NCBI RefSeq assembly: GCF_000150275.1
Contig: NW_002060952.1
Span: forward strand, 1,601,927 to 1,665,926
Reading direction: 5' to 3'
DNA length: 64,000 bases
DNA from: Trichoplax adhaerens
Lineage: Eukaryota > Animalia > Placozoa
A program made the position numbers and the translations under genes. Below the pieces are notes generated by a model. That model saw only the letters and a program-made list of their open reading frames with translations. It was not told the DNA's origin and did no database searches. Shown here one piece after another: positions 6,277 through 63,633 of this stretch; position 1 is the first letter of the stretch, and each line of letters starts with the position of its first letter.

Positions 6277-9200
6277 ATGGTAATTTTTATGTATTGATTG
6301 ATTTTGCGTTAAAAATGTATTTATGAGCTGTATTTTGAAAATATTTTCAAACCAACTCAAATCCATTCTGTTTGGGCTAGCAAATGAGACGTTGATTTGC
6401 TAAATTAATTTAATGATGTTTTTTTTAGAATTTATGCTTGGTATGGATATTTTTGAGAAGCTTAATCTGTGTTTCTGCTGTTGCTATAGTAGGAAAAAAT
6501 GAAAAATTCGGTAAGATATACAAAATCGACAACTTTATTTAAATTTACAAAACTGAGGCAATATATATATTATATATATATAATTTCTAATTAAGGACAT
6601 AGGCAACGCTGAAAGCACTTAGAGTTTTAACGCGATATCCAGCTCAACTATAAGTTGTTAATTTGATCGTTTTTAGAATCAATTACTGTTATAGTTAGTC
6701 ATTACTCATTTTAATGAGAATGAAGTAGCACTATAGTCAAATTAAAGATAGAAAAATGCACTATGCGTGGTACAAACATCTGCAAAATAAAGTAGCTATA
6801 ATAGCAATAATATTTAATCTACCAGTAACGCCATTTTAGGCAAGTGATGAATTTATTCTTACAGTCGATAACGCGTACAGTATATTTTCCTTAATTAAAT
6901 AATTTGCGGAAAATTGATAAATAAAGAAAAGTAGGAATAAGCTACAAATATGGCGTAGATAATAATATAAGCGATAAATTATGGATGTCTTGAGCTTCTA
7001 TTTATAAATGAGATGCTTGCAGGATAGCATTACTAAAACTTCTATCTTGGTCATTTAATTTAGACATGGAGTTGTTTTGGCTTAGTGCAGTAATTAATAT
7101 TGGTAGTATTGAAACCTTATCCATTCAGAAATAATCCTAGTCATCGCATTAATATGAGTATCTACTGCAATGTATCTTTGGAAATAGTCTAGTGTAAAAC
7201 TTCAAAATAACCAGTTTTTAATGCTCGAATTAAAATTAAGTTCTTTTATGAATTCTAAAATATTTCGCCATTTTCCATATACTATTTGGATTCGCTTAAT
7301 ACTCTATCTTTTCATTAACAGATAGCTGGTTTACTCATAATTTCAAGCGTTATTTCATCAGCTCGTCCGAAGCTAAATTTTCCACTGCTGTTAATTACTG
7401 TAAAAATAATTACAACGGTAGCTTAATAGAGATTAATGATGCAGCCGAAAATATCGCTCTTAATAAAATAGTAGGAACATTAACTAATAGTACTGGTGGC
7501 GCTTCCAGCTTATATTGGATTGGACTGGTAGATCAGAACGGGACATTCACTAATGCAACTTGGATCGACAGTAATACTACTGTTGGAAGTTGGAATACTT
7601 GGCATCAAGGAATCGTAGTAAATTCATCGAAATTATGTGCTGGTGTGTCGTATGGAGCTCATGCCATTCAGCTAAATTGGACTAACTTACGATGTTGCGA
7701 TCATTATCGTTTCATTTGCCAGCTTGGTAAGAATAAATGGATTGCGTTTAATTTATTTCTTTGTATTGAAGTGAGATTGAATCAAATTGAAAATAAGTAA
7801 CAGCATCACATCAAAATAAAAGCTGTTTTAAGTATCTGTATCATGACTGAAAGCTAGTATTTAAGATTTATTGTTTACAGAAGTTTAAATTGCTCACGTA
7901 TTAAGTTCGAATTCGGTGCGTGATTCCAAGAACTCCTAAGAGAAACGCTGTTATAAAGAGTTCTTGATGATTTTTGGTTATGCATACGACATATTATCCT
8001 ATAATAAACCCATGATATTGCAGATCACAAGCCATTTTCTTACCATAAGGCGATCAATTTTTGTGATAGAGCATCTTTGAAATAATATAAAATAAGAATT
8101 ACAGTCACTTCCAACTTTTCTTCATGACATCAATTCGGCTCGTCTTACAACTACGAAGGACTATCTAGCCGCAATTAGACTTTCTAAATTATCTAAATTA
8201 TTGCAACCAAATTCATAATTTTTACATAATCAATAGCAGAATGATTCTTTTAGCAATACAATGCAATCTTACTACTTAAGTTATAAAATTAAATCTCAAT
8301 TTATTATCATGATCTATTCTTTATTCACGTTTCTAATTAAGTATTACAATACAAATCTTACGGTATCCACGTACTGGGTACACTCTATTCATGTCTCGAA
8401 ATCTTAATATAAACGTTTCAATGGAATTGCCAAAATCCTATAATTATCTTCTATAAATAGATTCACAATCTTGTAATCTGACAAACAAGTTAACATTCTC
8501 GTACAATCTTCATCTTAGCTCTATTTGGGATTGCACTAGAACGTTATACGCGTAAATCTAGACGATAAGGGGTGATTATCTGAATGAGTTTGTATCGATA
8601 ATTTTACTCATAAAAGTTAGAAATACTTGGCGCAATCTATTCATGTCTCCGAATCTCAACGTAAATACCTCGATAAGATAGTAAAAAATCGTGCTATTGT
8701 AAACATCTTCTAAAAAGAAACAGTTAAACAATTTAATAATCTAGCATACTAGTTACTATTCTCTCACTATCTTAATCTTAGGTCTACTACGGATAGTAAC
8801 ATAAAGTTGTGCGCTTAAATCTCTAGATAAATAGTAATAATCTTTATGAGTTTATGTCGATAATTCGTTGATAGAAATTGGAAATACTTAGCGCAGCCTA
8901 TTCATTTCTGCAAATTTTAATACAATAATTCATTAGAATAGCTAAAATACGTCTTATAACCACCTTCTGCAAATAGATACCTACAAAATCTTATATTCTA
9001 ACATGCAAGTTACTATTCTCGTACAATCTTAATCTTAGCTCTGTTTGGGACTGCACTGCAAAGTCGTACGCATAAATACGTATCTACAATATGTAGTGAT
9101 CGTCTTAATGAATTTGAGTCAATAATTCACTCATAGAGGTTGATATTTTGGGAATAGATTGGATTTTCATGATGCTAATGTTAAGATTGAGCTACTAAGT

Positions 9201-12200
9201 GAAAGAAAAAAGCTATATTTCTATTTACTATATGTGTATATATTAAGTCCTATTGGATATTTTTGGATTGGACTGTGCATTTCTTAGCTGAAAGAAATAG
9301 CGTAAATTTCCACTTTCTGTTATGATTAAAATTTCTCATTTAGATTTAACTTCTAACAATTCTCAATCTGAGCTTTCGTCGTATCCTTTATCCGGTTATC
9401 ACTTACCCACACAAGCTAGTAAGTTATACATGTAGAATGAATATTAACAACAGTACCGTGAATATTTAATATAAAGTTTATTGACTGATTTAAGTTTTCA
9501 TCAATCGTCTACGTAATAACTAGGTGTAAATAGCTGCAACCCTCCATCAATGCGCTATAATAAGACTTGCATTACTGCAATTCATGACCCATTGCCGTTT
9601 TCCTTATGCAAAGACTATTGTGAAGCTGTGGGTAAGCGATTAATTCAAATTGAATCTAAAGAAAAATTGCAAGCTATAAAATCAGCTATACCAGCAGCCA
9701 TCTACTCGGAGATGTGGATTGGATTAAGAAGTCTAAAGACTACGGTAACGGGTATAGCGGACTTTCAGTGGTTAAATAGCAGTTTACCACCATTTACCAA
9801 TTGGGAAAAATTTCGTCCGCTCAAAGAACAGGATCCTCAGTCTGGAAAATGTGTTACAATGAGCAGTAAAACTTTTTTATGGAATAATCGACGTTGTACT
9901 TCCTTTTATCCATTTTTATGCGAGCAAGGTAATCCTTGCCAAGTTAAAATACTCAATCCCTTGTGGTAACAAGATTAATTGCTTTATATTACTCATCACT
10001 TTGCTAAACAGTACACTAATATATCGGTTTAATCATTTATGGGAACTGCGTAGAGCTCACTTGTCCCGTGGGATGGTGGCAACTTGGAGAGAAATGTTAT
10101 CAGCCTTCCAGCAGTAATTTTAAGCAATGGTCTACGGCATTTTATCACTGTCAGGAAAGCCACGCTCGCTTAGCCATTTTGCATGATGAATCCGAATTTA
10201 ATTTCGTTGCTAGTATAGTTCGATCAACGGGAAAGTCTGTTTGGATTGCTCTCAAGTCGAATACTAGTGGACTACAGTGGATTAACGACATTTTATTTGA
10301 CACACATCGAAACTTGAATACACTAGATCTCTGCATGGTAGTTAACATAACTAGCAATGTTGTCTATTGGCAGCTACAAAATTGTCTTAATAACTACAAC
10401 TTTTACTCGCTATGTGAGAAAGGTATCTCCTATTAGGGTAAAAAATAATTTACTCTGTTATGATTTAGCTAGTAACAGAATGGAAATATTACTTGAAAAA
10501 TCGGATTTTATTCTAAATTGTCGCAGTCCTTATTATAAATGGTAATTATTTACTCTATCTATTTGATACACTAATGTAGATACTGACTACTCGATGATAA
10601 TCCAATCCATGGTAAGTACCTTAATGTATGCCCAAATTTAGTAACCTCTTAGCTCTTTCTTCTGGTAAATGTCTACTGTTAAAAGATAATACGTGATTAA
10701 TGATGGAGCTAGTTAGAATTAAATCTTTCTTATTAATAATTTGTTACACTTACAAACATATTCTTGAACTTTCACCGAAATATATATAGCAATCTATTTT
10801 AGTTACATGAAATAAAATTGGCTTATGAGAAACTGTTTTATCTTGGCAGTTTTCAGTTCTACATTAATGTTAGTTACTCGTAATGGTTTCAAGTATGTGA
10901 CAATAATTTACATTATATTTGCTAGAATACTTATACTGCTGCAGGAAATATTTCGTCAGGAATTGGAAGATATTATTTTCGTGAGTAGTCCATGTAGAGG
11001 GTTGATTAAAGAGCTGAATTTAACGAATTGAAGTTAAATGAAATTGAATGAATGGTATTTACTGCTTATAACAGCTACATGCCCATATGGTTGGCTTGTC
11101 TACAATAAGCGATGCTACGACTTTCATACTGGTTTAGTCCCTAACTCGGAAGTGAGTAAAGAATGCTCACTGGGATCTCAGCCGGTTATAATTAATGATG
11201 CAAATACGGGTGCCATCATTAATGCGATGATCAGTAATGGAAAAGAAGTATGGATTGGTTTGCAGTATGTTAATGGATTCTTCTTCTGGTATGGAAGTAA
11301 CCTTGGTTTAAATTATTCCGTATGGGCCAAGAATCAGCCCAGTCTTGGAGGTAAAGACTGTGTTTCATTACTGAAATTAAATCGTACTGATGCCAGCTGG
11401 TATACAAGAGACTGTAATCGTTCATTTTCTTTCATTTGCCAAAGATGTAAGTTAGAATTTTAATTATCCTATTTATCAGACTTAATCAAACAAGAATTTA
11501 AATTAATCAAAGTATAGATGATATCGTGTTGATCGGCAACCATAAGTTAGAATATAACGTATCCAGTACAATATATTGAACTTCTTTGAGTAAGAATTTA
11601 AAATAACTAAAGTATAGATAATATCATATTGATTGGTATTAGTAAGTTAGAAAATTACTGATCCTAATTATCAAATTAATGGGGCAAGGATTTAAAATAG
11701 CTCGCGTTGATTGGAATTAATAAGTTAGAGTATTACTAATCCTAGGTTTCAAATTTAACTGAGTAAGAATTTAAAATCTTTAAAATGCAAATAATATGGT
11801 ATTGATTGGCATTAATAAGCTTTTCTGCCAATAATGGTCTGCTTATAAATCACTAGAAATGGATAAGTTCAAGCTACTCAAACTAAGAATAGAACATTTT
11901 AAACATGTCAATGAGATTATTAAGTTATTAAAGTGTTACTACTATATTTATGCACTTTTAAATGATCAAAACTCAAAGAAAATTTGCGCTGTATGTACGG
12001 ATATCTTACTACTTTATTTAACGATAAATACTCTACAGATGCGTCCGGATTAACAACAGACATCATCATCGATTCTAGCATCTATCGTAAGTATTTTAGA
12101 ACATACTATTGATTTCAATCATTCTATTAGCTTGACTGAAAAAGATGTTAGACTGAGCCTCTATTATGTATGTAATATACTTACTTACCTGCAGCATACT

Positions 12201-15200
12201 TCTAGTGTGTAATTAGGCTGTTTCTTGACGATGTTGAGAACTATCTCGTTAAGATGACGAACCGTCTGTAATATTGATTTCTAATAAACAATATAGGAAG
12301 AGCACATTCTAAATGCCCCACTTTTTGGAATAATAATGGATCTAGTTGTATTAGAACTACCTACCTTCCAATGAGCTTTTACGAGGCGCGTGAACTGTGC
12401 GGTTATCACAGTTCGGATCTGCTTATACTATCATCAAAAAAATTGCAAGATTTTGTAGAAAATTTGATACTACTAGAAACACAAAATATGTCAGAAAGTA
12501 TCGATTTGGACGGTGCATCCTTTTGGCTTGGGCTATATAAAACCAATCAAACATTTCGCTGGTTACAGGACTCGAGTATACTACATCCAGTTACCAAATT
12601 AGGGATCAATAGTAGTAATAATCATCACCAGTGCGCTGCAATGAAATATGTTTCCTTTCAAAAGTCTTGGGTCTGGTATCCGGTAGATTGCATCGGTCAT
12701 AAAGCATATCCAATTTGTCGAAAGATTCTAACCAGTAAAGGTATACAAAATAAGGAATATATAAATAGTGCAGCATAAAACTACATTTCATTTGAATAGA
12801 AAGCGGCTTGTGAATCACCTCTTGGATAGTTTTGCATTATTAGGAAGTTAGTATTATCTTCATCAAAGTAAGTTAATTAGCCGCTGATTTCGATAGTAGC
12901 ACTCACAAAGAGTTTGTTATTCATAATGATTGATGCAAAGAATAGTTTTAATGCTGTTAGAAGGTTAGCAATATCTTCCTGAAAGCAAGTCGATTAGCCT
13001 CCGATTTCGATAGCTTTAATAGCTAAGTGTTGGTTATTCGGTACTGTAGCTAAGAGGTTAATACTGAATATCGTAGAACTTTATCGCTTACCAGGTGTTT
13101 AATAGATAAAATTATTACAAAAATAGATATTTTTAGAAATAAATTCTTTATTAGCATGTTAAGCTTACCAGTATTAATTCTACTATTCGGAAAGAGTGAT
13201 ATATAATACTTATTTGAAAATAGGCCAATTGCCCTTATACACGCGTATCGTAATCGTTAACAAGGAATAGCATGTATAGAAAATCAACTATAAATCTTCT
13301 TTTTAAGACTAGTTAAGACTACAATAACTTAATTATTTAGATGAAGTAAAATATTTAAAGTTGCAGAAATGCATATTGTTTAAGCATTGAATACTCCAGT
13401 AGCGTGTTAAAATTATAAGTATTAATTCTACTGATCGTATTGAGTGGTAGTAGTTATAGTATTAATAGAAAATCAACTATATATTTTCTATTCAAGATTA
13501 GGCCAGACTAGACTAGCTTTATCGCTTAGATAATGTTCAAAAATGGATATAATTTAAGAATTAAATTCTCCATGAGCAAGTAAAAATTATCAGTACTAAT
13601 CGGAGTGAGGAAAAATAGTTATTTGAAAATAGGCCCATTTAACCATCTACTAATCGACATATGAATAGAATGCATAGCATAAATTTACCGCACGTTATTT
13701 ATCCTTAGTATCACAATATACTATATCTCTTAAGCTGCAAAGTAACCCGTATGTTTCGACAGAATTTAACTTTAAGATAAACATGTTTGAATAAATTTAT
13801 TGACAGGAGCATCTACCACGATACAGCCAGCAGTAGCTACGACTACTAAATCAACTCTAGCTTCAACTTCGACACCAAATAGTATCATTCAAGATGATAA
13901 TTACGATCAAATTGTCGATGATTCTGGATTAAAATTAGCGGAAGGATTAAATTCTACAAATTCAAATACTGTCCAAGCAACGAAATATAACAAGACCTTA
14001 GGTAAAGATCTCTAAATTAAATAAAGTAATTTAAAATCTTACAGACAGTAATATAATTACATTAGCCTCGATATCAATTGCTTAATTTATCTATGGTTAA
14101 TTTATTTGCAACATTTACACTGATGTCTCCAAGGTGTTCTGTGTTTCTTAAAATTTCATAGATTTCCAGAAAAATATATAAAGTTGCTGTTTTGTTTTCT
14201 GATAGTCTGTATAAATTTTTATGAGTTTGTTTTGAAAATTTTGGTTAATTATTAATTATACTTGTTAATATGTCAGATAGCAATCAGCAGAACCTTAATT
14301 TAATTGTTAGAGTCACAAACTGAAATTAACCGTAGGAAGATTAGTAGCAGACGATTTTGAGTTCAAATTACTAGCTCTTTTATAAACAGAGAATTTAAAT
14401 TGGTTTCTTCTTCATAAATATTTGTTCACTTCAAATTTCCAATCAGATATTTTTCTATTCTAGACGTTCATTATTTTGTAATGAGTGGAATTAGGATAAA
14501 CTTCAAAAAGGATATCGATGTTGACGTAGAAGATAGATTAGCTACCGTACAGTTCAAAGGGCCAGAATACCCACAAAAGATTGAGATTCCACCATCCGTA
14601 GTGCCAACTGATTTTAGTGGTAGGCAATTAGAATCCATTGAAGTAGGACAAGTCTAAAGATGAAGTTATTAAATCTGCACTTTACAGCCATTTAATGTCG
14701 AATATTTTATGTATATTACCTAAAATTATTTTAGGGAGGTTTCATATGGCTGTAGGAGTTTATAAAACGACACCCAATCAATACAAAAGCAGGTGTAGTA
14801 AATAACAAATTGAGGTTGAATACCAATAGTGATTAAGTCTACCTCTAGAACATAATATATAAAATTTGAATATTTTGAGAATTAATTTCTGTGCAATTTA
14901 GCGAAGTTATAATTTAGCCGTTCATGAGAAGAGCATAAGATCGGTAGAAAATTAGCTTGCATTTTAGTTCTTTGTTTATGCTATCAAAACTGTATCGAAT
15001 AAGGCCTTATATATAGCTAGTTTGAGCATAGACGTAATCAAACCTGTATCATCTCTCTAAAATCTATTGATGCTTTTAAAACAATTACCAAGCTGTTTTA
15101 TAAAGAGCAATAAATGTTTAATATCAAAGTAATATGGCATTTTTTTTTCTTATTTCATATTTTGAATAAGAAACCTTCCTAAAAAAATGCCTTTTTACTC

Positions 15201-18200: not shown

Positions 18201-18926
18201 TAGGGTCTCCCTTCGTGCTGCTGTTGCTTTACTGCCGTTGCTTGGAGTTACATGGGCATTTGGTTTCATATCAGCTAACAATTCTACGGTTACATTTTCT
18301 TACCTTTTTGTTATATTTAATTCACTACAGGTAAGCTAACAATCTTAAAGGCATGGAAATATTATATCCAAATAATCAGGTGTTTTACTCTATCTATTTT
18401 ATGGAATCAATGCAATCTTGGAAGGGGACATTCGTTTTTTACTTTCATTGCTATAACTATAAAGATGTAAGCTTAAAGAGCATATTGTTACTTTAATTTT
18501 GTTGCTAAGAGAAATTTTGACTTAAAAATAAAGGTTTAACTACTGATATTTTTGTGAGTTAACTTTTGAGATTTGATTTATCATCCTTAGGTCAAGAAAT
18601 ATTATATGAATTGCTTTGCAAAAGGTCGAAATGTTATTTCTTCCATGAAAAATTCCGATACTGGAGGACTGGGTGCAGCTTCCAAGGTAAGGATTTAAAT
18701 TGATACATTTATAAAAATAAAGCTCTGTACGCGTATATTCCTTAAGCTGATATAAATTAATTTGAGTATATGTTACACTACGTATTTACATAATCAGGCT
18801 ACTCGTACAATAGCCTTCATAACGTCAGTATCTGAAATTAAAAAAGTCACTATCAATTATATTCTACTTAAGCTTCGGAAACCTGCCTGGTCGAATGATA
18901 TCAACTCAAAATCAAATAAGAAGTAA
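6277..18926 (+). CDS. Gene A: adhesion GPCR (class B2) with 5 C-type lectin domains, GAIN/GPS and 7TM; ~1259 aa, 26 exons
   Basis: Hand-spliced GT-AG exons: 6277-6279 (ATG, tentative), 6429-6510, 7322-7726, 9524-9928, 10054-10422, 10580-10611, 10926-10980, 11075-11446, 12039-12086, 12297-12740, 13807-14001, 14464-14619, 14735-14792, 15285-15384, 15516-15556, 15681-15798, 15893-15996, 16325-16427, 17264-17414, 17493-17559, 17783-17849, 17943-18028, 18204-18330, 18425-18466, 18591-18686, 18873-18926. Total 3780 nt with consistent phases. Motifs: WIGL-type CTLDs, GPS KCISYHL|TSFSVLL, HANLA, LHFSFLASFSWMLVEG, GWGTP, LLPLLGVTW, NSLQGTFVFYFHC. Confidence 0.9.
6429..6510 (+). CDS. Gene A signal-peptide exon (NLCLVWIFLRSLICVSAVAIVGKNEKF)
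   Basis: ttttttag acceptor and gtaag donor; 82 nt, the same length as the equivalent exons at 33450-33531 and 48443-48524; hydrophobic core. Confidence 0.7.
7322..7726 (+). CDS. Gene A CTLD1 exon (absent from the ORF track because it has no start codon)
   Basis: DSWFTHNFKRYFISS...AVNYCKNNYNGSL...LYWIGLVD...KLCAGV...NWTNLRCCDHYRFICQL; phase 1-1; homologous to 32506-32916 and 52076-52486. Confidence 0.92.
8375..9145 (+). repeat. Three degenerate tandem units of ~260 bp in a gene A intron (CTLD1-CTLD2)
   Basis: Recurrent CTATTCAT(G/T)TCTC at ~8385/8637/8898 and ATTCTC..ACAATCTT.ATCTTAG at ~8495/8758/9015. Confidence 0.85.
9524..9928 (+). CDS. Gene A CTLD2 exon
   Basis: CNPPSMRYNKTC...YCEAVGKRL...MWIGL...NWEKFRP...GKCV...WNNRRCTSFYPFLCEQ; ag/gt boundaries. 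Confidence 0.93.
10054..10422 (+). CDS. Gene A CTLD3 exon
   Basis: CPVGWWQLGEKCY...VWIAL...LCMVV...WQLQNC...LCEK; 369 nt in all three paralogues. Confidence 0.93.
11075..11446 (+). CDS. Gene A CTLD4 exon
   Basis: CPYGWLVYNKRCY...VWIGL...WAKNQPS...DCV...WYTRDCNRSFSFICQR. Confidence 0.93.
11490..11820 (+). repeat. About four degenerate tandem units of 80-100 bp in a gene A intron
   Basis: Recurrent AAGAATTTAAAAT...TTGATTGG...TAAGTTAG. Confidence 0.75.
12297..12740 (+). CDS. Gene A CTLD5 exon
   Basis: CPTFWNNNGSSC...FYEARELC...FWLGL...QCAAM...WYPVDC...PICRK. Confidence 0.92.
13165..13645 (+). repeat. Degenerate internal repeats in the gene A CTLD5-stalk intron
   Basis: AGTATTAATTCTACT (~13170, ~13418), TAGAAAATCAACTATA (~13277, ~13466), TATTTGAAAATAGGCC (~13211, ~13620). 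Confidence 0.65.
13807..15798 (+). CDS. Gene A S/T-rich stalk plus GAIN/GPS exons (6 exons)
   Basis: S/T-rich segment, helix QIVDDSGLKLAEGL, beta-rich exons, then LCVYW...WASD...VKCISYHL|TSFSVLLQ (His codon 15754, Thr codon 15760). Confidence 0.88.
15893..18926 (+). CDS. Gene A 7TM and C-tail exons (10 exons), ADGRD1/GPR133-like
   Basis: TM1 ILTYIGLSISLMCL, TM2 VHANLA, TM3 LCQAIAFMLHFSFLASFSWMLVEG, TM4 GWGTP, ECL2 CW, TM5 FGIP..IN, TM6 LLPLLGVTW, TM7 NSLQGTFVFYFHC; stop TAA at 18924-18926. Confidence 0.92.
16704..16782 (+). mobile_element. Dispersed repeat fragment (family 1) in the gene A TM2-TM3 intron; sister copy at 44163-44244
   Basis: CCCACTTGTGATTTGGTTA...GTGCTAT.G.AATTGTGTAAGGCTTCCACTGACTTGG.AGTCTTCT is shared with 44163-44244; this intron is much longer than in the paralogues. 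Confidence 0.75.
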
Positions 18927-54500: not shown

Positions 54501-57500
54501 TTTCAGTTTTATTGATCCTTTAAGATTTAATACTAACAGGGCATAAAATATATCCGCACTATATGAACGAATAAATAGTACTAAATTATTTGTTTTAAAG
54601 TTTATTTAGAATTTTTGCAATCTTAATATATTCGTATGCTAGTCTCACGAGATTTCTGCTATCAATTAGGCTTTTTTCCTATTTTTACTAAGCATGCTAA
54701 TACTGTGTTGTTTTGGCAGTAGTAATTTCGAAAAGTAATGTTCTTTACATAATTTATTTTAAGGAAATCAATTTTTGACTTGTTTATTTCGAATTTAGAG
54801 TAACCCCACCACCAATATTGTTGCATCAATGGGAAGACCATTTTTCGTAAGTAAAATACTTATATCAATTAAGGATATTATTGTAACCAGAAATAAAGCG
54901 GGTTTGCATATCTCATTCGTCACTGGCAATCTTTTACTGTATATAGCTTACTATTTAATAGTTCAGAACGTCTCTTCCTATAGAATGCTACTAAAAAATA
55001 AATTATGCAACTTAGACCGCAAAGATAAATCAACATTATCACCATCCTTAGATAGCAGAATCACAAAAATAGTTATTAGTTAGTAATAACAATAAATGAT
55101 GTTTGTAATTGAGTTAAATTTCGGCATGGCTACATGAATTTAACAGCTACCTGCCAGGGACGTTGGCTGCTACATGGTAAATACTGCTTTGACATTATAA
55201 GTAGCAAGATAACGTACGGAGAATATGAGAGCCAATGTCAAGATTCTCAAGCTTCCCATCCCGGAATTATTTATGACCATAAAGTTGGATTGATCGTAAA
55301 TACCATACTAAATGATGGGGATGAAGTTTGGATAGGATTACAATCGAGATTAGATTCTTTCGTGTGGTATGATAATAGAACACGATTTAACTATTCTAAT
55401 TGGGCAACTGGAGTGCCAAGTGTAGCTAATGGGACTGGCTGTGTTACCTTGAAAAAGTATAATGAAGCAATCAGTTTTTGGTATATTCGAAATTGTGACA
55501 ATAAATATAAAGCCCTTTGCCAAAGATGTAAGATATCATTTAAATATGGTAGCCCAATTTGGTGTCATGTTGATAATAGCATGCCACGCATAATACATTT
55601 ATAACTATTAATATCATTAAAATTACAAATAGTTTATCATTTAATTTGGAACGCAGTACCAGCTTACTAGTAGCTCTAATATTATCGAGGTATTCAATAG
55701 TTTAGTTTAGGTAGTGCAGGAGTAAAATACCAGTTATTGGTTTTAGAAAGATACCTTTCTTTAAATAAACTGCAGAATACTCGAACAAATAATTTTGTTT
55801 CTCATCCTTATTAGTTATATTATCGTATATATTCAAAAACTTTGTATTTATCGATCATTTCAGTTGCAACTGGAACATCCAATGATATCCTTAGAAGTCC
55901 CAAAATATTTCGTAAGGGTTGTAATAAGATGTGTAATTTTCCTTATTTTATAATGGAACGATCACTTTACTCTAAAATATTCTATAATTGTGACGTTAAG
56001 GATAATGTCTAATAATTTATAATATAATCTATCAAAACTTAATTAATTATGTTAATGTCATTTCATCGCAGATAAGCAGCACTCCGTTTGCCCCAATTCA
56101 TGGGATTTTCAGAATTCTAGTTGTATTAAAATATTCAATTCACTCGCAGCTTTTTATGAAGCTCGCGAAATTTGTCATTATTGGAATTCAGATTTGGTCT
56201 TATTAAACACTCGAGAAGAGCAAAATTTTGTAGAAAGCGTAATACTAAATAAGGTGCAATTTAGAGCCAAGCCTTTTAGCTATTCAAATCAGTCGTTTTG
56301 GATTGGATTATTTCAGAAAGATCCACAAGATTACTTTTGGATCCAAAAAAACGCTAAAGTTTATCGAAATGATACTACAAAATTAAAGACTAAACCTAGT
56401 GGCCATCAATGCGTTATTTTGCAATATGATATTGAGACGGAGTCTTGGAGTTGGATTCCAGCTGATTGCATTAGTCAATTAGCTTACCCGATATGTCAAA
56501 AAGCACTAAATGACGACGGTAATGAATTTTATAGAATAATTTAAATCTATAGATTATAACACACCCATAAAATCCATCTATTTCATGTAGCTCAATCTCG
56601 CTTTATCATCTTAGTTCTAAAAATAGATTTGATTAATTCTAAGAATACTTTCAAGGCATGATTATGAATTTTGTAATTTTCTATCACGAAAATTACCAAT
56701 CATTATGAAGTAATTATTTCTGGTTCTAAATGAAGATACTAACTTAGCTAGATTATACTTTCACGATTTCGATATTATATTTTTTTGAGTATGGGGTGAA
56801 TAGATAGTTTAACTACAGTAGTTGATTCGCAACTATATACTATGATTAAATAATTTTTACCTCTCATTCATAATCTCAGTTTTGCTCATAGTTAGGAGAT
56901 GAATATGAAATCTTAAGAATTTTTCTCAATACTCATCATTTTTTCTAGATCTAATAACAGCGATACCTTCGATAGCACCTGCATCGACTACATCAAAATC
57001 AAATACACATCTATCAACATCAAATCCTATTAATAGAACTAATATCGATGCAAATACAAATATCGAAGACCTGGAAAGTGCTGGCTTACAATTAGCACAA
57101 AATTTAGCAGCGAATAGTAGTATCGTACAGCTATGGTATCACAACAAGACCTTAGGTAAATATAATATGAGTACTAAATTTAATAATGATTTCAAAATCG
57201 AATTATCACTCAATATGCTAATAAAGTATGATCACTTAAGCGGTTATCCTTATGTTTCATGATAATTTTGACCTTTATATGTTTAAATACAATATTAGGT
57301 ACTTGTAATTGCCACAGTCCAAATATTTACTGATGTAATTAGCCAATTTTTGTTGGTTTGCAATTGTTACATAGAATATTGATACTAGTACACTATCAAT
57401 AGATTATATTTACTATATTTTCAGCTAGTACAATGCAGATTCTCATAGCATAGTTGCTGTGTTTGAAAATTCGTGATTCACACTGATCACGTTTGTAGGC

Positions 57501-60500
57501 TTACTTGCAAGATCACGCAGTACTTGTCTTCGAATACATTTACATTAAGATACTACTAGTAGTACGTAAATTATAGCACTTTGACGATAGATGTAACAGT
57601 TTTACCGGTATAGTTTCGATCTCGACGGGCAAGTTAGCTAGTGAGTTATTAATAGCATAAATTAATTGGTTTAGACCATGAGAGCATAGTATTATTGAAT
57701 TAAACGTCTTAGTGGTTGTAAATACATCGATATTCTATTGTAGCAAAGTACATACGGTATCACTAATTGGATAGTCCTTAATTAAAATCAGTCCTTAAGA
57801 TCTGATTTATTGTAAAGTACGATAGCATTTAATAGGAAATTAGAGTAGTTATTGCCATTTTATAATATTAACGTAGTATTGCACAAAGTAGATTATATTT
57901 GTAAAATAGATAGTAATGTATTTCTAAACATGCTCTATTTTCGATTGCACTTTAACAACCATATTTGAAACACATATCATTGCCGTAGGTTTAGTCACCA
58001 ATGTAGTTGCATGCCAATCGAAATTTGATATTCGTAAACGTAACGANNNNNNNNNNNNNNNNNNNNNNNNNNNNNNNNNNNNNNNNNNNNNNNNNNGTTA
58101 TATCTTTATTTGGGATTACATAGACTAAAATAGTAATAGCCAACCAGCTAAATTGGATTATATCTATCACCTCCAAGGTTGATAAGGTTCAAAGTACAAT
58201 TTCTAAGTTTAGAGGAAATGTCTTAGTAGAGTAGCTTTATATGTATCTGTTAAACTGTTAATAAGCATTGTTTATTTTAATACTGTTACAGTAAATGTAA
58301 TAGGATTAGACTGTATCTAATCTGTACAGATAAAATTTCTTTAGGGTATTAATTTGGTTAATTTCCAATAGACAAGATAACTTATGTAGCTAAATTGGTT
58401 TTAGGTCCGAAACCTATTTAAACGGCAAGTTCGCCGACAATAAATTAGATTGCGATTTTTTAGTAAGTCTTGAAGGTCTCCCTGTGTTAAACCCTATCTG
58501 TTTTTATATATCATTTGTTTGATATTCGAAATAACAGTGGTAAAGGGTAGAAATCACTCTCTCAATTCTTGTCGCAAGTTAGAGCTATTCCTAGCTCGTA
58601 ACATATGCCTAAAAAACTATATAGTTTCATAAAACTAATAATATTAATGTCTTAGCTATTTAAATTCGAATATGCGGCCTTAGAAACTTCTTTTGTATTT
58701 TAGGAGTCTATTATTTCTTAATGAAAGCATTTAGAAATGATATTAGTGAATCGATAACTGTTAGCTTGAAGGGAAAAAATCCATATTTGCAGTTTACAAC
58801 CTTTGGTAGTCCAGTAAAGGTTGAAATACCAATATCTGTTGTGCCAAGGGAATCTTCTGGTGAGAGATATATACGTATTCATCTTCAATAAGTTTATGGT
58901 ATTAATGCTAGCTGTAATAGTTGATTTTAATGATCCTACAGAGAGATTTCAACTGGTTGTCGGCGTTTATGAAACTTTACCGGTTCAAATAAGTAGCAGG
59001 TTAATAAAACTGCTGAGCCTATTTGTTAATATTTCATTCTGTATGATCGATTTAAAGTAAAATATGCAATGAAAGTACCGCAATATCTCTATACTGTAAT
59101 TAAAATTCTATATTTGACAAGTTTTTAAATTACAGTATAAATAAGTGACAGTAGAAAAGAAAATTGGCAAGTTATCGTAATATTAGAATGCTTACAAACT
59201 GTTAAAACCGTCTGATGGTAATCTAACAGAAAACTTATTGCACAAATTATGCTATTGAAGAATATTAATTCCGTAGCAAAAAATGCCATATTAAATAACT
59301 GTATGAATCATGCTTCTGTATTGCACTAGTAAACTTAAACGCGAATACAATCTAAGATCATAATTCGCTTCTGGAAAATGTTTTATTTTAAATTTACTGT
59401 TCTAGTGCTGTTGCTGCCTAAGTATGGTATTTCGATACTATAGAGAGAGAGAGACTAATAATTTGCATCTTAAATCAATTTTCCTTTAATTTTGTAAATG
59501 AATATTATTTTGCTACAAAATACGAATGTATTAATTTTTTTAAGACCAAAGGGCTGGTTTTGCCAGTTAAAATTTTCTTTTCGATTTGCAGTAAATGGCC
59601 ACCACTTAAACATTCCGTATTATGTAAAATTCAACCTTTAATAACAAAGAAATTTCAAGATCCAATTATCTTTTACTTTAAAATCGATGAGGTAGTGAAA
59701 GTTGAAAGAACTAAGTTAACAAAATAATTGCATCTGCTATCAATGACGTAATCTTTCGCTTAATCTATGTGATTATCGCTTATTATAGTTTACTACTTGT
59801 AGTTATTAACTTTCTATCGTTTTTAAACTAGAACAGCACGATTCAACCTTTGTGTAGTTATTGGAATGGAAAGTAAGTATTCCTACCTTCAAATCTTTAC
59901 TGCAATAAGACTTATTTCTGCCTTTATTCACTGAAATTTATCTTAAATTAAATACCTAAACTGACTTATTCTTATCTTTTCTCGTTAAATATTTATTAGT
60001 CAATGGGCTACAGATGGAGTTGAAACTCAGAGATTAAATAGTACAATAGTCAAATGTATTGCCTATCATTTGACCAGTTTCTCAGTTTTACTCCAATTTG
60101 CTCAATATTTGGTAAACTCTAGAGTTTTACATTTATATTTCACTATGAATTGGCTATTTAATTAAAAAGTACTAGCTGATAAAACAATCTTTTGCTTTCT
60201 TTCCAATAAAGATTGATCCTCTTCATCTGAAGATTTTAAGTATTTTAACATATGTCGGATTATCTATTTCGTTATTTTGCCTACTAATAACCCTCTGGAC
60301 TTTCACTACTGTCAGGTGTTATTTCTATTAATTTCCAACTAACTGGGCAAATACACAAATTTATGTTGTTTTTGTTACCTAGATAAGAAATGTACTGTAG
60401 AGTTAAATAATTTATTATTATTTTTTATGCTAATATTGAAATTAAACGATTTACTTAAAACAGACGATTTCATAGCATTCGCGGTATGATACATGCTAAT

Positions 60501-63500
60501 TTGGCAGGATCTTTGATTATTTCCACTTGTATATTTTTAGCTGGGATTGATAGAACTGATAATATGGTAAATGATTCAATTAATTTAATATCACTAATTA
60601 AGATTTGCTTAGACTAAAAATCCATCACGATGATATAAATAGAAGACTGACCTCAGCTATGAACAGATTATATTTTAATAGTAATCTGAGTTCTAAAAAA
60701 ATTAAGAATTAACATAAAATCAAATATATCAGAATGTTCAAATATAAATAATGTAGATTTTTAATGTACAAACTCATTTAAGGCATCTTTTTCTATGAAG
60801 ATAATATTTAAAAATAGATTTCACCTTATTAAAGTCCATTGTCGGCGATGATTATTCGATCGATTAGGTATTATGTCAGATTATTGCCGCAATTCTTCAC
60901 TTTTCGTTTTTGGCGTCCTTTGCTTGGATGCTGGTGGAAGGAATCATTACTTTTAAAATGGCTACTCAATGGCCAGAAACGGTCTTTTCTTGCGTGATAT
61001 ATAATGTTTTAGGATGGAGTAAGTGCTCAGTAATGAAATATCGGAGTAGAGGAATTGATACTATAACTCTAACAATTTACGTCTGCAATTTAAAGGTGGG
61101 TCGATTATCATTGTTCTTGTGGCTTTCCTGCTGAAAAGGGAATTTTATGGCAGCAAGAATTAGTATGTTTCAGTGATAGCATGGACATATAATGACTACT
61201 ATTCGCCTTATACTGAATCCTCTTCTAAATTCCCAATAACAACAGCTACGATTAAAACAGTCTCTATTGCATCAAATAAATGGGTCGTGTAAATCAGTTA
61301 GAATAAGGAGCAATACAACCAGTAGCATTCTCTACTAGCTATCTCTAATTCTAATTCTAACTAATATCCATCTAATCTTCTTGTTTTGCTATGCTATTTA
61401 CTCCAATATTGTAAATATATGAAATAGCAGGTTTTATATTTATTTATTATTTAGATTCCAGAGTTCATTAGATCATATGTAAATCATGTACAGACGAAAC
61501 ATATCCCACCTTCTATTTCCAATATTATTTATCGCTATTACATTTTCTATTATCACTTTATTATACAGATTGACAATTTTAGTTGATAAATTATCAATAC
61601 ATGAACCTAATAGATGACATCTTATCTTAGTGATAACTACCATTATCCTACAGGAAAAAATTAATAAAATAAATTAGATTATTTAATGGTATAAGTATAA
61701 GTGATTTAAAGTTACACAATAAGAATCCTAATTATTTTTGAAGAACTAATTATAATCTCTGATGCAAATATCAACCTTTGTTCTTAGTTGTTGGATTACT
61801 TCGAATCCATTCTTATTGTACGTTTTCGGAATTCCCGTTCTTGTAGTCATTATTGTAAGTGAATATAAGATACGATAATCTGCACTACGGAGTTTATTTG
61901 GATTAGAACATATACAACCATACCTCTATCTTTAATACTCTTTCTGATTTTCTAGATCAATATTATACTTATGATAAAGATAACTAGAATTCTAATGGGA
62001 ATTCGAGCCGTGGCAAATAAATCTAATTTGGAGAAAGCCAAGTAATTTCAGACTGTTTCATAAGTTTTAATTAAAGTAGTGTAACTAATCTGACAGATTT
62101 AAGATTCAGCCTTATAGTTCAGTTTTATTTGTATTGAAGCTTTTAATTATATGGTTGCATTGCAAATTCTCACAATTCGTATATTATAATAATCTATTTA
62201 TACGTAGTATATTTAGGTGTTGTAATGTAACTTAGTATTGTGATTGTAGACTGTTAGCCATGTGTAGTATAATGTACGGTAGATATTTATCCTAAGAGAT
62301 ATTTGGTAGCTGTAACTATAGACTGTAGTGGTAGAGACTCTATGCTAGAGTACAGATGACTATATACAGTAAGCTGCTGAGTTACTAATATGGCTATAGG
62401 TAAAAATAGAACTGTAAATCATATATTAGGATATGGTTAATTCATTGTACTTTGGCTGGTGTGAATAATGTCTACGTAAGTACTGTAGTCGTATCCATAT
62501 TGGATTAATGATGGTCCGCAGTAGAATAGCCTTACTAAGAATAATTTAAATATGTGTAAAATAAGGTAAAAGGTTGCCATGCGGATTGTAGCTGCGAATT
62601 CTACGGAAAGTATAACAGCATGCAACTTTAGATTATTCTGTTAGTTCGTTGTAGAAGTCTTTAGAAGTAGTATTCGGCTAGAGTAGAGCTGTGTAGTTAA
62701 TCTTTGTATAAGATTGAATAAAGCCCTTATTTTTCTAAAATTTGGAATTTTGTGATTGGTATATATCACACCAATCATTAGTATTCACTAGTGTACTGTA
62801 TTTGGGGTAACAAACGAGATGTATCAACATGTTTGTGAGGGCGGGTAGGCGGTGGGCAAAATAATTTGGTAGGAAATTTAATCGAGCAAAATATTTAATC
62901 AAATGTAGGATACTGGTACTTACTGTAACCTTTTAATTTACCATCACTAACGTAAATTATGAAAATACTAAACTTAATATAAAATTAAAATTCAGGTGGA
63001 GAAGAATTTTAATAACTAAATTTTCTCATTTTACGTATAGAGCATCGCTGCGCGCTTCCCTTGCTTTGTTGCCTCTGCTTGGAATTACCTGGCTGTTTGG
63101 CTTTCTAGCAATCAGTAATGGTACTCTGGTATTTTCCTATCTCTTCGTTATATTAAATTCCTTACAGGTGAAAAAGTTTTCCTTCTCTATTATATTATGC
63201 TTGTCTTTCATCGACTCGTAGAAAATTTATGATATAGTAATATCTTTTTCATCATATACCATATAGGGAACATTTGTATTTTATTACCATTGCCTTAAAT
63301 ATAAAGACGTAAGTCCTCAATATATATATAAAGAGCAAATTTTGTTAGATTTTACATGAATTTTTCTTTTACTCATATAATTTAAGGTGAAAAATTATTA
63401 TCGAAGATTTCTTACAAAATGTCGGATTACTGTCAGCTCTATGAAAATTTCCGATGGTAGTAAAAGTCATAATACTAGAGCAAAAGAGGTAAATGATCAC

Positions 63501-63633
63501 CAAAAGACTTAATAAACAAAAATAGATTAGTCTAATATGGTAAATAGACTTTGCTCAGATTCTACAATATTTCTTTACTCAAAGCTACGATAATTTGTTT
63601 TAGCATCCAAGATCTGCTTGGTCAAAGAGATAA
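51563..63633 (+). CDS. Gene C: adhesion GPCR with 5 C-type lectin domains, GAIN/GPS and 7TM; ~1260 aa, 26 exons
   Basis: Exons: 51563-51565 (ATG, tentative), 51870-51948, 52076-52486, 52963-53370, 53753-54121, 54275-54306, 54799-54846 or 54850, 55147-55527, 55864-55911, 56072-56518, 56949-57155, 58704-58859, 58942-58999, 59592-59691, 59832-59872, 60000-60111, 60212-60315, 60464-60566, 60868-61018, 61096-61162, 61788-61854, 61956-62041, 63041-63167, 63267-63308, 63387-63488, 63604-63633. Open frame (3783 nt) if the donor at 54851 is used. Confidence 0.87.
52076..52486 (+). CDS. Gene C CTLD1 exon
   Basis: GDRWFSHYFKRYFIS...HYWIGLMD...KLCAGV...WINLNCADNFSFICQL. Confidence 0.93.
52963..53370 (+). 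CDS. Gene C CTLD2 exon
   Basis: LCKAPSVLFDSTC...LWIGL...DPQSGNCI...WNNRRCNSFYPFICEQ. Confidence 0.93.
53753..54121 (+). CDS. Gene C CTLD3 exon
   Basis: CPVNWLQIGGNCY...LWVAL...ICMV...WRLQKC...PLCMQ; 369 nt. Confidence 0.93.
55147..55527 (+). CDS. Gene C CTLD4 exon
   Basis: TCQGRWLLHGKYCF...VWIGL...NWATGVPS...GCV...WYIRNC...LCQR. Confidence 0.93.
56072..56518 (+). CDS. Gene C CTLD5 exon
   Basis: VCPNSW...SSC...FYEAREIC...FWIGL...QCVI...WIPADC...PICQK. Confidence 0.92.
56949..60111 (+). CDS. Gene C stalk plus GAIN/GPS exons
   Basis: Helix IEDLESAGLQLAQNL; LCSYWNGNQWATDGVETQRLNSTIVKCIAYHL|TSFSVLLQ. Confidence 0.88.
58047..58096. other. Assembly gap (50 N) inside a gene C intron
   Basis: Run of n characters. 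Confidence 0.99.
60212..63633 (+). CDS. Gene C 7TM and C-tail exons
   Basis: IHANLA, LHFSFLASFAWMLVEG, CW, LLPLLGITW, NSLQGTFVFYYHC; ends HPRSAWSKR-stop. Confidence 0.91.
62221..62770 (+). mobile_element. ~550-bp solo-LTR-like element (family 2) in the gene C ICL3-TM6 intron
   Basis: TGTAATGTAA...ATATATCACA imperfect inverted termini, AATAAA near the 3' end (~62717); halves found at 19548-19990 and 22760-22905; no clear TSD. Confidence 0.65.

What the first reader, a model, noticed from the sequence alone, without database searches (positions are those of the whole stretch)
6277..63633. Cluster of three adhesion GPCRs, each with five tandem C-type lectin domains: a candidate lectin-array sensing receptor family
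Seen in sequence: exons that look like unrelated short lectin ORFs splice into three ~1260-1280 aa receptors with the same layout (SP, 5x CTLD, S/T stalk, GAIN/GPS, class B2 7TM), arranged tail-to-tail (A/B) and head-to-head (B/C). Established: vertebrate adhesion GPCRs use EGF, Ig, TSP1, pentraxin, SUEL-lectin, cadherin or LRR modules, and multi-CTLD arrays are typical of mannose-receptor-type scavenger receptors rather than GPCRs. Inference: a mannose-receptor-like recognition array coupled to a cleavable tethered-agonist GPCR and expanded by local duplication, possibly for microbe, food or self/non-self recognition. Lectin-GPCR fusions have been noted in some invertebrates, so novelty must be checked.
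Basis: partly seen in the sequence, partly recalled or inferred. Interest (0 to 1): 0.9.

Follow-up and report, generated by a model that had tools for sequence, protein, structure and literature searches.

The report
Known placozoan lectin-domain adhesion GPCR cluster
The window holds three real Trichoplax adhaerens genes, each joining five C-type lectin-like domains to an adhesion-type GPCR, but this receptor family was described in placozoans in 2019 and two of the genes are already annotated.

Summary
Three paralogous intron-rich genes each encode a signal-peptide-like exon, five C-type lectin-like domains (one per phase-1 exon), a Ser/Thr stalk, a GPS motif with HL|T, and a secretin/adhesion 7TM. 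They are A (+, about 6277-18926), B (-, 33522-23168) and C (+, 51870-63633).

For gene B, spliced contigs from three studies show GT-AG joints at every intron from CTLD5 to the last exon. One 3397-nt contig joins lectin, stalk, GPS and TM exons.

The window is Trichoplax adhaerens. Gene A is TRIADDRAFT_59344 and gene B is TRIADDRAFT_59345. The Trichoplax sp. H2 orthologues are annotated "ADGRL3". Kamm et al. 2019 (PMC6321704) already reported 28 CTLD-plus-7tm_2 receptors in placozoans and proposed the same recognition-coupled-to-GPCR idea. The architecture is therefore not new.

- The trio is part of an array of at least 7 genes.
- About 30 such loci exist genome-wide. The scan's first readers noted similar arrays on two other pieces of this genome.
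- Public H1 models are truncated.
- None of the 15 CTLDs keeps the EPN/QPD and WND sugar-binding motifs.
- Gap 1 is flanked by a 93% repeat, probably an unmerged haplotype.
- Gap 2 is intronic.

The parts
4655..4675 (+). Gene A, alternative first coding exon used by the JGI model (seven codons, then GTATGT)
   Evidence: One search found the pattern. Residues 1-7 of P0001 belong here. Not RNA-verified.
6277..6279 (+). Gene A, alternative one-codon start (ATG followed by GT).
   Evidence: Not RNA-verified.
6429..6510 (+). Gene A signal-peptide-like exon (hydrophobic core, phase-1 donor)
7322..7726 (+). Gene A CTLD1 exon (phase 1-1)
   Evidence: Pfam Lectin_C 3e-11; boundaries
9524..9928 (+). Gene A CTLD2 exon
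   Evidence: Lectin_C 3.1e-13
10054..10422 (+). Gene A CTLD3 exon
   Evidence: Lectin_C 1.2e-8
11075..11446 (+). Gene A CTLD4 exon
   Evidence: Lectin_C 1.1e-10
12303..12734 (+). Gene A CTLD5 exon. A short linker exon probably precedes it (candidate 12039-12086, uncertain).
   Evidence: Lectin_C 7.9e-11
13807..14001 (+). Gene A Ser/Thr-rich stalk exon
   Evidence: no Pfam family
14464..15556 (+). Gene A juxtamembrane (GAIN-B-like) exons: 14464-14619, 14735-14792, 15285-15384, 15516-15556
   Evidence: same lengths and phases as the RNA-verified B exons
15681..15798 (+). Gene A GPS exon with HL|T. It is omitted from the public JGI model.
   Evidence: Pfam GPS 1.9e-5. P0001 has no GPS hit and skips this exon.
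15893..18466 (+). Gene A 7TM exons: 15893-15996, 16325-16427, 17264-17414, 17493-17559, 17783-17849, 17943-18028, 18204-18330, 18425-18466
   Evidence: 7tm_2 hits
18591..18926 (+). Gene A cytoplasmic tail exons: 18591-18686, then the last exon 18873-18926. The last exon is inferred; the JGI model uses 19201-19263 instead.
33450..33522 (-). Gene B signal-peptide-like exon with in-exon ATG at 33522
32506..32916 (-). Gene B CTLD1 exon. Inferred; it is absent from both public B models.
   Evidence: Lectin_C 7.7e-10
31513..31923 (-). Gene B CTLD2 exon
   Evidence: Lectin_C 1.3e-10
31024..31392 (-). Gene B CTLD3 exon
   Evidence: Lectin_C 2.7e-10
29869..30249 (-). Gene B CTLD4 exon
   Evidence: Lectin_C 5.5e-13. 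Best PDB matches are PLA2R and FcRY, about 2.5e-23.
28844..28891 (-). Gene B 48-nt linker exon between CTLD4 and CTLD5. The 3' boundary is RNA-supported; the 5' boundary is inferred.
   Evidence: Loose end of spliced contigs, located
28143..28589 (-). Gene B CTLD5 exon (RNA-verified boundaries)
   Evidence: Lectin_C 6.1e-13; joints
27537..27791 (-). Gene B Ser/Thr stalk exon (RNA-verified)
   Evidence: joints 27791|28143 and 26973|27536
26118..26974 (-). Gene B juxtamembrane (GAIN-B-like) exons: 26819-26974, 26690-26747, 26285-26384, 26118-26158
   Evidence: The 41-nt exon was deduced from contig arithmetic and GT-AG sites. Atlas features resemble GPS/GAIN-B clusters.
25879..25990 (-). Gene B GPS exon with HL|T followed by a TSFSVLL tethered-agonist-like sequence
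   Evidence: GPS 7.4e-8 in P0153
23553..25783 (-). Gene B 7TM exons: 25680-25783, 25442-25544, 25106-25256, 24962-25028, 24829-24895, 24637-24722, 23680-23806, 23553-23594. All are RNA-verified.
   Evidence: joints; 7tm_2
23168..23390 (-). Gene B tail exons 23292-23390 and 23168-23194 (stop codon 23168-23170)
47252..49807 (+). Partial second copy of gene C's 5' end: upstream DNA, signal-peptide exon ending at 48524 (the counterpart of 51870-51948), CTLD1 48652-49062, and the start of CTLD2. It ends at gap 1. Probably an unmerged divergent haplotype, possibly a true partial tandem duplicate.
   Evidence: 93.3% over 2561 columns; uniform 5-7.6% divergence; Lectin_C
49808..50674 (.). Assembly gap 1 (867 N). 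It cuts the left copy's CTLD2 exon. The sequence is not continuous or in frame across it.
51870..51948 (+). Gene C signal-peptide-like exon (phase-0 acceptor, no ATG; the start-codon exon was not found)
52076..56518 (+). Gene C CTLD1-5 exons: 52076-52486, 52963-53370, 53753-54121, 55147-55527, linker 55864-55911, 56072-56518
   Evidence: Lectin_C on each; boundaries
56949..57155 (+). Gene C Ser/Thr stalk exon
58047..58096 (.). Assembly gap 2 (50 N), inside intron 7 of gene C
   Evidence: Bridged by the copy at C1405:1710605-1713817.
58704..60111 (+). Gene C juxtamembrane exons (58704-58859, 58942-58999, 59592-59691, 59832-59872) and GPS exon 60000-60111
   Evidence: GPS 1.1e-5
60212..63633 (+). 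Gene C 7TM and tail exons: 60212-60315, 60464-60566, 60868-61018, 61096-61162, 61788-61854, 61956-62041, 63041-63167, 63267-63308, 63387-63488, 63604-63633 (stop)
   Evidence: 7tm_2

Best explanation
The window is Trichoplax adhaerens DNA carrying three members of the placozoan family of receptors that join C-type lectin-like domains (CTLDs) to a secretin/adhesion GPCR. Kamm et al. described this family in 2019.

Each gene has about 23 exons. Each encodes a type-I ectodomain made of a signal peptide, five CTLDs (one per symmetric phase-1 exon) and a glycosylated Ser/Thr stalk. A short juxtamembrane region follows and ends in a GPS motif with an intact HL|T site and a TSFSVLL tethered-agonist-like sequence. 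Then come a 7tm_2 domain and a short tail.

Shown here: the domain content, the gene structures, the paralogy (CTLD position n matches position n across genes), and the splicing of gene B from CTLD5 through the 7TM.

Inferred: ligand binding to the CTLD array is coupled to G-protein or arrestin signalling and internalisation, possibly through GPS autoproteolysis and exposure of the tethered agonist. The ligand is more likely a protein or particle than a simple sugar, because the canonical sugar-binding residues are absent.

The three genes are part of a tandem array of at least 7 genes made by whole-gene duplication, with ectodomains diverging faster than the 7TM.
For: Domains: Lectin_C hits on all 15 CTLD exons, plus GPS and 7tm_2.

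Splicing: GT-AG joints from CTLD5 to the last exon of gene B in spliced contigs of runs X4, X5 and X6, from three studies. No joints appear in the DNA-like run X1. One 3397-nt contig spans upstream exons, CTLD5, stalk, GPS, TM1 and TM2. Open reading frames of 1244, about 1232 and at least 1231 aa come out with canonical splice sites.

Identity: exons are 100% identical to TRIADDRAFT_59344 (gene A) and 95-100% to TRIADDRAFT_59345 (gene B). The H2 orthologue RDD37619.1 carries 5 Lectin_C + GPS + 7tm_2 in one model.

Prior description: Kamm 2019.

Paralogy and divergence: positional CTLD identity is 40-58% against 14-26% between positions. TM exons are 64-80% identical against 38-57% for CTLD exons.

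Family size: further 5xCTLD-7TM genes flank the window, and about 30 co-linear Lectin_C/7tm_2 loci occur genome-wide.

Topology: seven hydrophobic segments after the GPS and 21-25 N-glycosylation sequons in each ectodomain.
Against: RNA support covers only gene B, and only from the linker/CTLD5 onward. It comes from assembled contigs, not reads.

Expression of A and C was not examined. Gene C's start codon was not found.

The GAIN fold is unproven. No Pfam GAIN hit appears at E<=1. The AF2 model has mean pLDDT 33. Two of the four GPS cysteines are missing, so autoproteolysis is uncertain.

There is no canonical sugar-binding motif, so the ligand class is unknown. No functional data exist for these genes.
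Confidence: 0.85

Rival explanations
1. The lectin exons and the GPS/7TM exons belong to separate transcription units: a secreted or membrane multi-CTLD protein next to an orphan GPCR. The fusion would be a gene-prediction artefact.
For: The public T. adhaerens models are inconsistent. P0001 lacks the GPS exon. P0153 and P0161 lack CTLD1 (and P0153 part of CTLD2). Alternative lectin-only isoforms cannot be excluded from contigs.
Against: Spliced joints CTLD5->stalk->juxtamembrane->GPS->TM1 appear in three independent RNA-type runs, and one contig spans them all. Intron phases are compatible and the frames stay open throughout. The H2 model RDD37619.1 has all the domains.
Confidence: 0.03
2. 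The block 47252-49807 is a genuine partial tandem duplication of gene C's 5' end. It would be a fourth, truncated lectin gene, or extra CTLD exons that can splice into gene C to give a 7-CTLD isoform. It would not be an assembly artefact.
For: The gap has a positive mate-pair-type size estimate (867 N, against the 50-N default gaps). The 6.7% divergence is high for alleles. Both CTLD1 copies keep open frames, with pN/pS about 0.46. Phase-1 exons would splice in frame.
Against: The homology runs exactly from the first base of the right contig to the last base of the left contig. That is what an unmerged overlap gives. Divergence is uniform over coding and non-coding DNA. A second piece of gene C (57373-60467) also exists as a stray 96-98% contig between two 50-N gaps, so this assembly does hold split haplotypes of this very gene. 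Run X1 shows two contigs differing at 6 of 161 positions in gene B's intron.
Confidence: 0.35
3. The receptors act mainly as endocytic scavenger receptors, like the mannose-receptor family. The 7TM would serve as a membrane anchor and arrestin-dependent internalisation module, without tethered-agonist G-protein signalling.
For: The CTLDs are closest to PLA2R, FcRY, MRC1 and DEC-205. Two GPS cysteines are lost. Kamm 2019 stresses endocytosis and a large arrestin expansion.
Against: HL|T and a Stachel-like TSFSVLL are strictly conserved in A, B and C. The 7TM exons are the most conserved part. This argues for selection on receptor activation, not just anchoring.
Confidence: 0.2
4. One or more of the three copies is a non-functional pseudogene.
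For: Gene C has no identified start codon and is interrupted by two gaps.
Against: All modelled exons are open with canonical splice sites and conserved phases. Conserved cysteines and the WIGL motifs are kept. Gene A's H2 orthologue is a full model.
Confidence: 0.07

Closest known systems
Placozoan CTLD-containing secretin/adhesion GPCRs (Kamm et al. 2019, BMC Genomics 20:5; 28 genes in Trichoplax sp. H2, Dataset S3A)
   Same: Same phylum and same architecture (CTLDs + 7tm_2). Genes lie in clusters of neighbouring locus tags. The functional proposal is the same. Genes A and B have 94-100% identical H2 orthologues (RDD37619.1, RDD37614.1).
   Different: Nothing essential. The paper works on H2 and gives no exon-level models, no GPS or sugar-motif analysis, and does not name these genes. 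Public H1 models of A and B are truncated. No full-length model of C was found in these limited searches.
Mannose receptor family (MRC1, PLA2R1, LY75/DEC-205, MRC2, avian FcRY)
   Same: Tandem arrays of CTLDs, most of which lack sugar-binding residues. These are the best PDB matches for the CTLDs here (E about 1e-23). The recognition/scavenging role is the same idea.
   Different: That family has an N-terminal ricin-type domain and an FNII domain, 8-10 CTLDs, a single TM helix and an endocytic tail. Here there is no ricin or FNII domain, there are five CTLDs, and the anchor is GPS + 7TM.
Adhesion GPCRs (class B2), for example latrophilins ADGRL1-3, the name given to the H2 orthologues
   Same: 7tm_2 core, a GPS motif directly before TM1, the HL|T site, a Stachel-like sequence, and a long modular glycosylated ectodomain.
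   Different: No RBL/Gal_Lectin, olfactomedin or HRM domains, so these are not latrophilin orthologues. No detectable GAIN subdomain A. Only two of the four GPS cysteines remain. The ectodomain is built only of CTLDs.
Amphioxus adhesion GPCRs with a Lectin C-type domain (Nordstrom et al. 2008, PMC2246102)
   Same: A CTLD in the N-terminus of an adhesion GPCR.
   Different: A single CTLD mixed with other domain types, according to Kamm 2019. It is neither a pure five-CTLD array nor a large expansion.

Membership tests
Adhesion GPCR (class B2) | Secretin-type 7TM domain (Pfam 7tm_2) | tested here: met
   Exon hits in A, B and C. Full-length 7tm_2 with E about 1e-48 to 1e-50 in the public models of A and B. 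Seven hydrophobic segments.
Adhesion GPCR (class B2) | GPS motif immediately N-terminal of TM1, with the HL|T/S cleavage consensus | tested here: met
   Pfam GPS above cut-off. HLT followed by SFSVLL in all three genes. Actual cleavage cannot be tested here.
Adhesion GPCR (class B2) | Four conserved GPS cysteines (two disulfides) | tested here: not met
   Only the C-x-x-W cysteine and one cysteine of the C-x-C pair are present. The other two positions are V or L and A or S in A, B and C.
Adhesion GPCR (class B2) | Complete GAIN domain fold (subdomains A and B) | tested here: inconclusive
   No Pfam GAIN hit at E<=1. The AF2 model has mean pLDDT 33. Language-model features of residues 560-745 resemble GPS/GAIN-B clusters (score 0.97). 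Only about 150 residues lie between the stalk and HL|T, too few for a full GAIN.
Ca2+-dependent carbohydrate-binding C-type lectin (CRD) | CTLD fold signature (Pfam Lectin_C, WIGL, conserved cysteines) | tested here: met
Ca2+-dependent carbohydrate-binding C-type lectin (CRD) | EPN or QPD motif plus WND motif (Ca2+ site 2 and sugar ligation) | tested here: not met
   Alignment of the 15 CTLDs with an EPN/WND-bearing MRC1-like CTLD4: 0 of 15 have either motif.
Mannose receptor family | N-terminal ricin-type (CysR) and FNII domains, 8-10 CTLDs, single-pass TM | tested here: not met
   Pfam finds only Lectin_C/UL45, GPS and 7tm_2. There are five CTLDs and a 7TM anchor.
Latrophilin / ADGRL3 (public name of the H2 orthologues) | RBL (Gal_Lectin), olfactomedin and HRM domains before GAIN | tested here: not met
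   None of these families is found in P0152, P0153, P0161 or P0002 at E<=1.
Placozoan CTLD-7tm_2 receptor family (Kamm 2019) | Placozoan gene with one or more CTLDs (IPR001304) and a 7tm_2 domain | tested here: met
   The window is T. adhaerens. Domains are shown. H2 orthologues are found.
Placozoan CTLD-7tm_2 receptor family (Kamm 2019) | Listed by locus tag in Dataset S3A | not tested
   Dataset S3A gives TrispH2 locus tags. I have only GenBank accessions (RDD37619.1, RDD37614.1) and no mapping between the two.

The most novel reading that the evidence does not exclude
The two stray copies of parts of gene C are pieces of a second, strongly diverged haplotype. They are 47252-49807 (93% identical) and a contig matching 57373-60467 (96-98% identical). 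If so, this CTLD-GPCR cluster is hyper-polymorphic within one clonal animal line. That would suit a variable self/non-self or microbe-recognition locus under balancing selection, and not only a large paralogous family.
Probability: 0.15. Interest if true: 0.55.

Novelty: already known. Interest (0 to 1): 0.2.

Why it matters
The fusion of a mannose-receptor-like CTLD array with an adhesion-type GPCR is a striking feature of placozoan biology. It may link recognition of microbes, food or symbionts to G-protein signalling in an animal without nerves or dedicated immune cells. It has been in the literature since 2019, and two of these genes are in GenBank, so the scan gains no new kind of system here.

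The practical gains are:
- Corrected gene models. The H1 annotations omit the GPS exon (gene A) or the first CTLDs (gene B), and gene C has no full-length model among those found.
- All 15 CTLDs lack the canonical sugar-binding residues. This redirects ligand hunting toward proteins or non-canonical ligands.
- The five-domain array predates the gene duplications.
- Both assembly gaps are explained.

Tried and rejected
1. AlphaFold2 of the public gene B protein (P0153) with a 6-sequence alignment gave mean pLDDT 32.9 and pTM 0.24. It is unusable, so no fold search was run and nothing is claimed about a GAIN fold from it.

I could not read the public annotation around gene A or find gene C's annotated model.

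3. A search for gene C's start-codon exon and for conserved first exons found no convincing candidate to the right of gap 1. A mini-exon at 46594-46617, upstream of the left copy, is only a guess.

4. My first greedy exon finder failed at the short linker exon and used uncorrected joint coordinates. It was redone with GT-AG-adjusted coordinates.

5. My first guess that exon 26244-26384 was one 141-nt exon was replaced by 26285-26384 plus a 41-nt exon at 26118-26158.

6. The linker candidate 12100-12171 in gene A creates a stop at the junction. 12039-12086 is kept, but only as a candidate.

7. The search for homologous proteins with P0001 and P0153 found no orthologue of gene C and no non-placozoan protein with both CTLD and 7tm_2. 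Given the word index and the length window, this is not evidence of absence.

8. Literature searches for the gene names and accessions returned nothing. The search for 'CLECT' together with adhesion GPCRs also returned nothing.

9. Rfam found nothing in the window.

Joined models were built only inside local scripts to check frames and lengths. All searches used single exons by reference or public protein ids.


Full report
**What is in the sequence**

The window is AT-rich (about 30% GC) and has three N runs: a single N at 49753, 49808-50674 and 58047-58096. Stop-free frames on the expected strands fall into three collinear series. Pfam scans of single exons, given by reference, find Lectin_C in five exons of each series (E 1e-8 to 3e-13). 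GPS is found in series A and C, and 7tm_2 in all three. Reciprocal comparison of all open frames shows exon-for-exon correspondence. CTLD exons are 38-57% identical and TM exons 64-80%.

**Is it one transcript?**

I laid four runs on 23100-28700, which covers gene B from CTLD5 to its 3' end.

- Run X1 covers exons and introns alike and shows no joints, so it behaves as DNA.
- Runs X4, X5 and X6 come from three studies, and X6 is recorded as RNA-seq. They give spliced contigs whose skipped parts all read CT..AC on the plus strand, which is GT..AG for a minus-strand gene.
- The joints connect CTLD5 (28143-28589) to the stalk (27537-27791), to four small juxtamembrane exons, to the GPS exon (25879-25990), to eight TM exons and to two tail exons.
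- One X4 contig of 3397 nt holds CTLD5, the stalk, the GPS exon, TM1 and TM2, plus 1992 nt that lie upstream of CTLD5. The expected upstream coding length is 1693 nt.
- The contigs' upstream loose end maps to 28845. This reveals a 48-nt linker exon between CTLD4 and CTLD5.

The refuting scenario, lectin exons transcribed apart from the 7TM, is excluded for gene B from CTLD5 onward. These are contigs, not reads, so transcript ends and minor isoforms remain open. Genes A and C were not examined with reads.

**Gene models**

Joining the RNA-supported exons gives one open frame. The upstream CTLD exons were placed using the rule seen at CTLD5, that every CTLD exon is phase 1 on both sides.

- Gene B has 23 exons, and all 22 introns are GT-AG. 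The ATG is at 33522, the stop at 23168-23170, and the protein is 1244 aa.
- Searching A and C for exons with the same phase and similar peptide recovers every exon from the stalk onward, with the same or nearly the same length.
- Gene A comes to 1216-1247 aa, depending on which linker exon is real.
- Gene C comes to 1231 aa plus an unidentified start-codon exon.
- Each model has an N-terminal hydrophobic exon, 21-25 N-glycosylation sequons in the ectodomain, seven hydrophobic segments after the GPS, and a tail of about 50 residues.

Joined models were used only inside local scripts.

**The gaps**

Gap 1. The 2556 bases left of the gap (47252-49807) are a 93.3% direct copy of the 2554 bases right of it (50675-53228). 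The left copy carries a signal-peptide exon, a complete CTLD1 and the first part of CTLD2, which the gap cuts. Right of the gap come 1.2 kb of upstream DNA and then the complete gene C. Nothing is continuous or in frame across gap 1, and gene C does not need it, except perhaps for its missing first exon.

Divergence between the two copies is uniform: upstream 7.6%, introns 5.3-6.3%, exons 5.3-5.6%, and pN/pS about 0.46.

I favour an unmerged divergent haplotype (about 60%) over a true partial tandem duplication (about 35%), for three reasons:

- The homology runs exactly from contig end to contig end.
- Another piece of gene C (57373-60467) exists as a stray 96-98% identical contig at C1405:1710605-1713817, boxed between two 50-N gaps.
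- Run X1 shows two contig variants differing at 6 of 161 positions in a gene B intron.

Against this, the gap has a sized estimate of 867 N, whereas the other small gaps carry the 50-N default, and 6.7% divergence is high for alleles.

Gap 2. It lies in intron 7 of gene C. In A and B the flanking exons are adjacent, and this is RNA-verified in B. The stray contig bridges the gap collinearly with 154 bp.

**Identity of the genome and genes**

A representative-library search with gene B's CTLD5 exon returned Trichoplax adhaerens proteins first. Local tblastn shows that TRIADDRAFT_59344 (XP_002115300.1, 1123 aa) matches gene A's exons at 100%. TRIADDRAFT_59345 (XP_002115426.1, 1041 aa) matches gene B at 95-100%. 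The genome has 105.6 Mb in 1414 contigs, and the window is C1405:1601927-1665926.

The Trichoplax sp. H2 orthologues are RDD37619.1 (1331 aa; five Lectin_C + GPS + 7tm_2) and RDD37614.1 (1111 aa). Both are named 'Adhesion G protein-coupled receptor L3'.

The public H1 models are incomplete:

- The model of gene A skips the GPS exon and truncates CTLD4.
- Both models of gene B start inside or just before CTLD2.
- No full model of gene C was found.

**Prior description**

Kamm et al. 2019 (PMC6321704) state that 28 of 36 CTLD receptors of Trichoplax sp. H2 are secretin/adhesion GPCRs and that the combination is unique. They note one amphioxus adhesion GPCR with a CTLD. They propose that CTLD-mediated pattern recognition is linked to GPCR signalling, trafficking and endocytosis. 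Dataset S3A lists the genes, many with consecutive locus tags.

Other papers bear on this as well:

- Nordstrom et al. 2008 confirm Lectin C-type domains in amphioxus adhesion GPCRs.
- Mayorova et al. 2025 note that certain peptidergic, astacin-expressing metacells express one or two CTLD-GPCRs.
- A 2025 Mnemiopsis paper lists GPS, HormR and 7TM among the domains combined with CTLDs.
- No paper names these particular genes.

1. The trio is part of a larger array. Lectin_C and 7tm_2 searches of the whole genome, plus tblastn of 184 kb around the window, show further 5xCTLD-7TM genes at C1405:1673631-1682174 and 1691999-1704369. There are minus-strand members around 1710-1735 kb and one upstream at 1572.8-1581.3 kb. 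About 30 loci genome-wide have Lectin_C upstream of 7tm_2 on the same strand, on C1387, C1411, C1401, C1408 and other contigs. First readers of the scan noted similar arrays on two other pieces of this genome.

2. CTLDs at the same position are 40-58% identical between genes. CTLDs at different positions are only 14-26% identical. The five-domain array therefore predates the gene duplications. The ectodomain diverges faster than the 7TM.

3. None of the 15 CTLDs has EPN/QPD or WND when aligned with an MRC1-like CTLD4 that has both. The closest solved CTLDs are those of PLA2R, FcRY, MRC1 and DEC-205. Canonical Ca2+-dependent sugar binding is therefore not predicted.

4. The GPS keeps HL|T and a Stachel-like TSFSVLL but lacks two of the four cysteines. 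This agrees with a separate first-reader note. Only about 150 residues separate the stalk from the cleavage site. No Pfam GAIN hit appears, and AF2 failed. Language-model features point to GPS/GAIN-B. At most, a reduced GAIN consisting of subdomain B is likely.

**Mechanism**

Shown: the domain order, the membrane topology by hydropathy, and the splicing of gene B.

Inferred from established knowledge of adhesion GPCRs: ligand engagement or mechanical pull on the CTLD/stalk fragment exposes the tethered agonist after GPS autoproteolysis, and this activates G proteins. Arrestin-mediated internalisation is an alternative or additional output.

The ligand class is unknown. The missing sugar-binding residues and the resemblance to PLA2R favour a protein or non-canonical ligand.

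**Verdict**

The novelty class is 'already known' and the interest is low (0.2). The least ordinary reading still open is that gene C is present as two strongly diverged haplotypes, hinting at a hyper-polymorphic recognition locus (probability about 0.15).

Noticed in passing
window 57373-60467 and G000:C1405:1710605-1713817 (L005 about 4679-7891): A 3.2-kb copy of gene C's intron 7 through the start of the TM2 exon (96-98% identical) sits about 51 kb downstream. It is boxed between two 50-N gaps inside another, minus-strand CTLD-GPCR gene. It looks like a misplaced alternative-haplotype contig. It supplies 154 bp at the position of the window's gap 2.
   Followed up: partly
window 62212-62772: A repeat of about 560 bp in the intron between gene C's exons 61956-62041 and 63041-63167. 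At least five further copies (93-98% identical, both orientations) lie within the surrounding 184 kb. Probably a short transposable element.
   Followed up: no
window 27586-28388: Contigs of X1 (DNA-like), X4 and X5 show a non-canonical joint 27611|28353 (TC..GT, only 26 letters on the short side). Their long loose ends at 27586 and 28388 match nothing in the laid stretch. Probably contigs of a paralogue or a structural variant; unexplained.
   Followed up: no
window 27273-27433: Run X1 has two contigs over the same 161 bases of a gene B intron. One is identical to the window and the other has 6 differences (3.7%). This suggests high local heterozygosity in that sample.
   Followed up: no
window 41014-41102: A 41-bp tandem repeat (2.2 copies) in the 13-18 kb spacer between genes B and C. 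The 40001-42000 bin also has a strongly negative GC skew (-0.225).
   Followed up: no
G000:C1405:1665927-1672312: A 6386-N gap starts at the first base after the window, 367 bases past gene C's stop codon.
   Followed up: no
G000:C1405:1686462-1686593: An isolated TM3-like 7tm_2 fragment lies between two full CTLD-GPCR genes. It may be a gene remnant.
   Followed up: no
window 46594-46617: A mini-ORF (ATG plus 7 codons, then GTAAGC) lies 1.85 kb upstream of the left-copy signal-peptide exon. The spacing is similar to that of gene A's JGI first exon. It could be gene C's start exon if the left copy is allelic. This is pure conjecture.
   Followed up: no
window 19201-19263: The JGI model of gene A ends in an exon here. 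The exon at 18873-18926 encodes a C-terminus more like those of B and C (the P/S-AWS motif). Which one is used is unknown.
   Followed up: no
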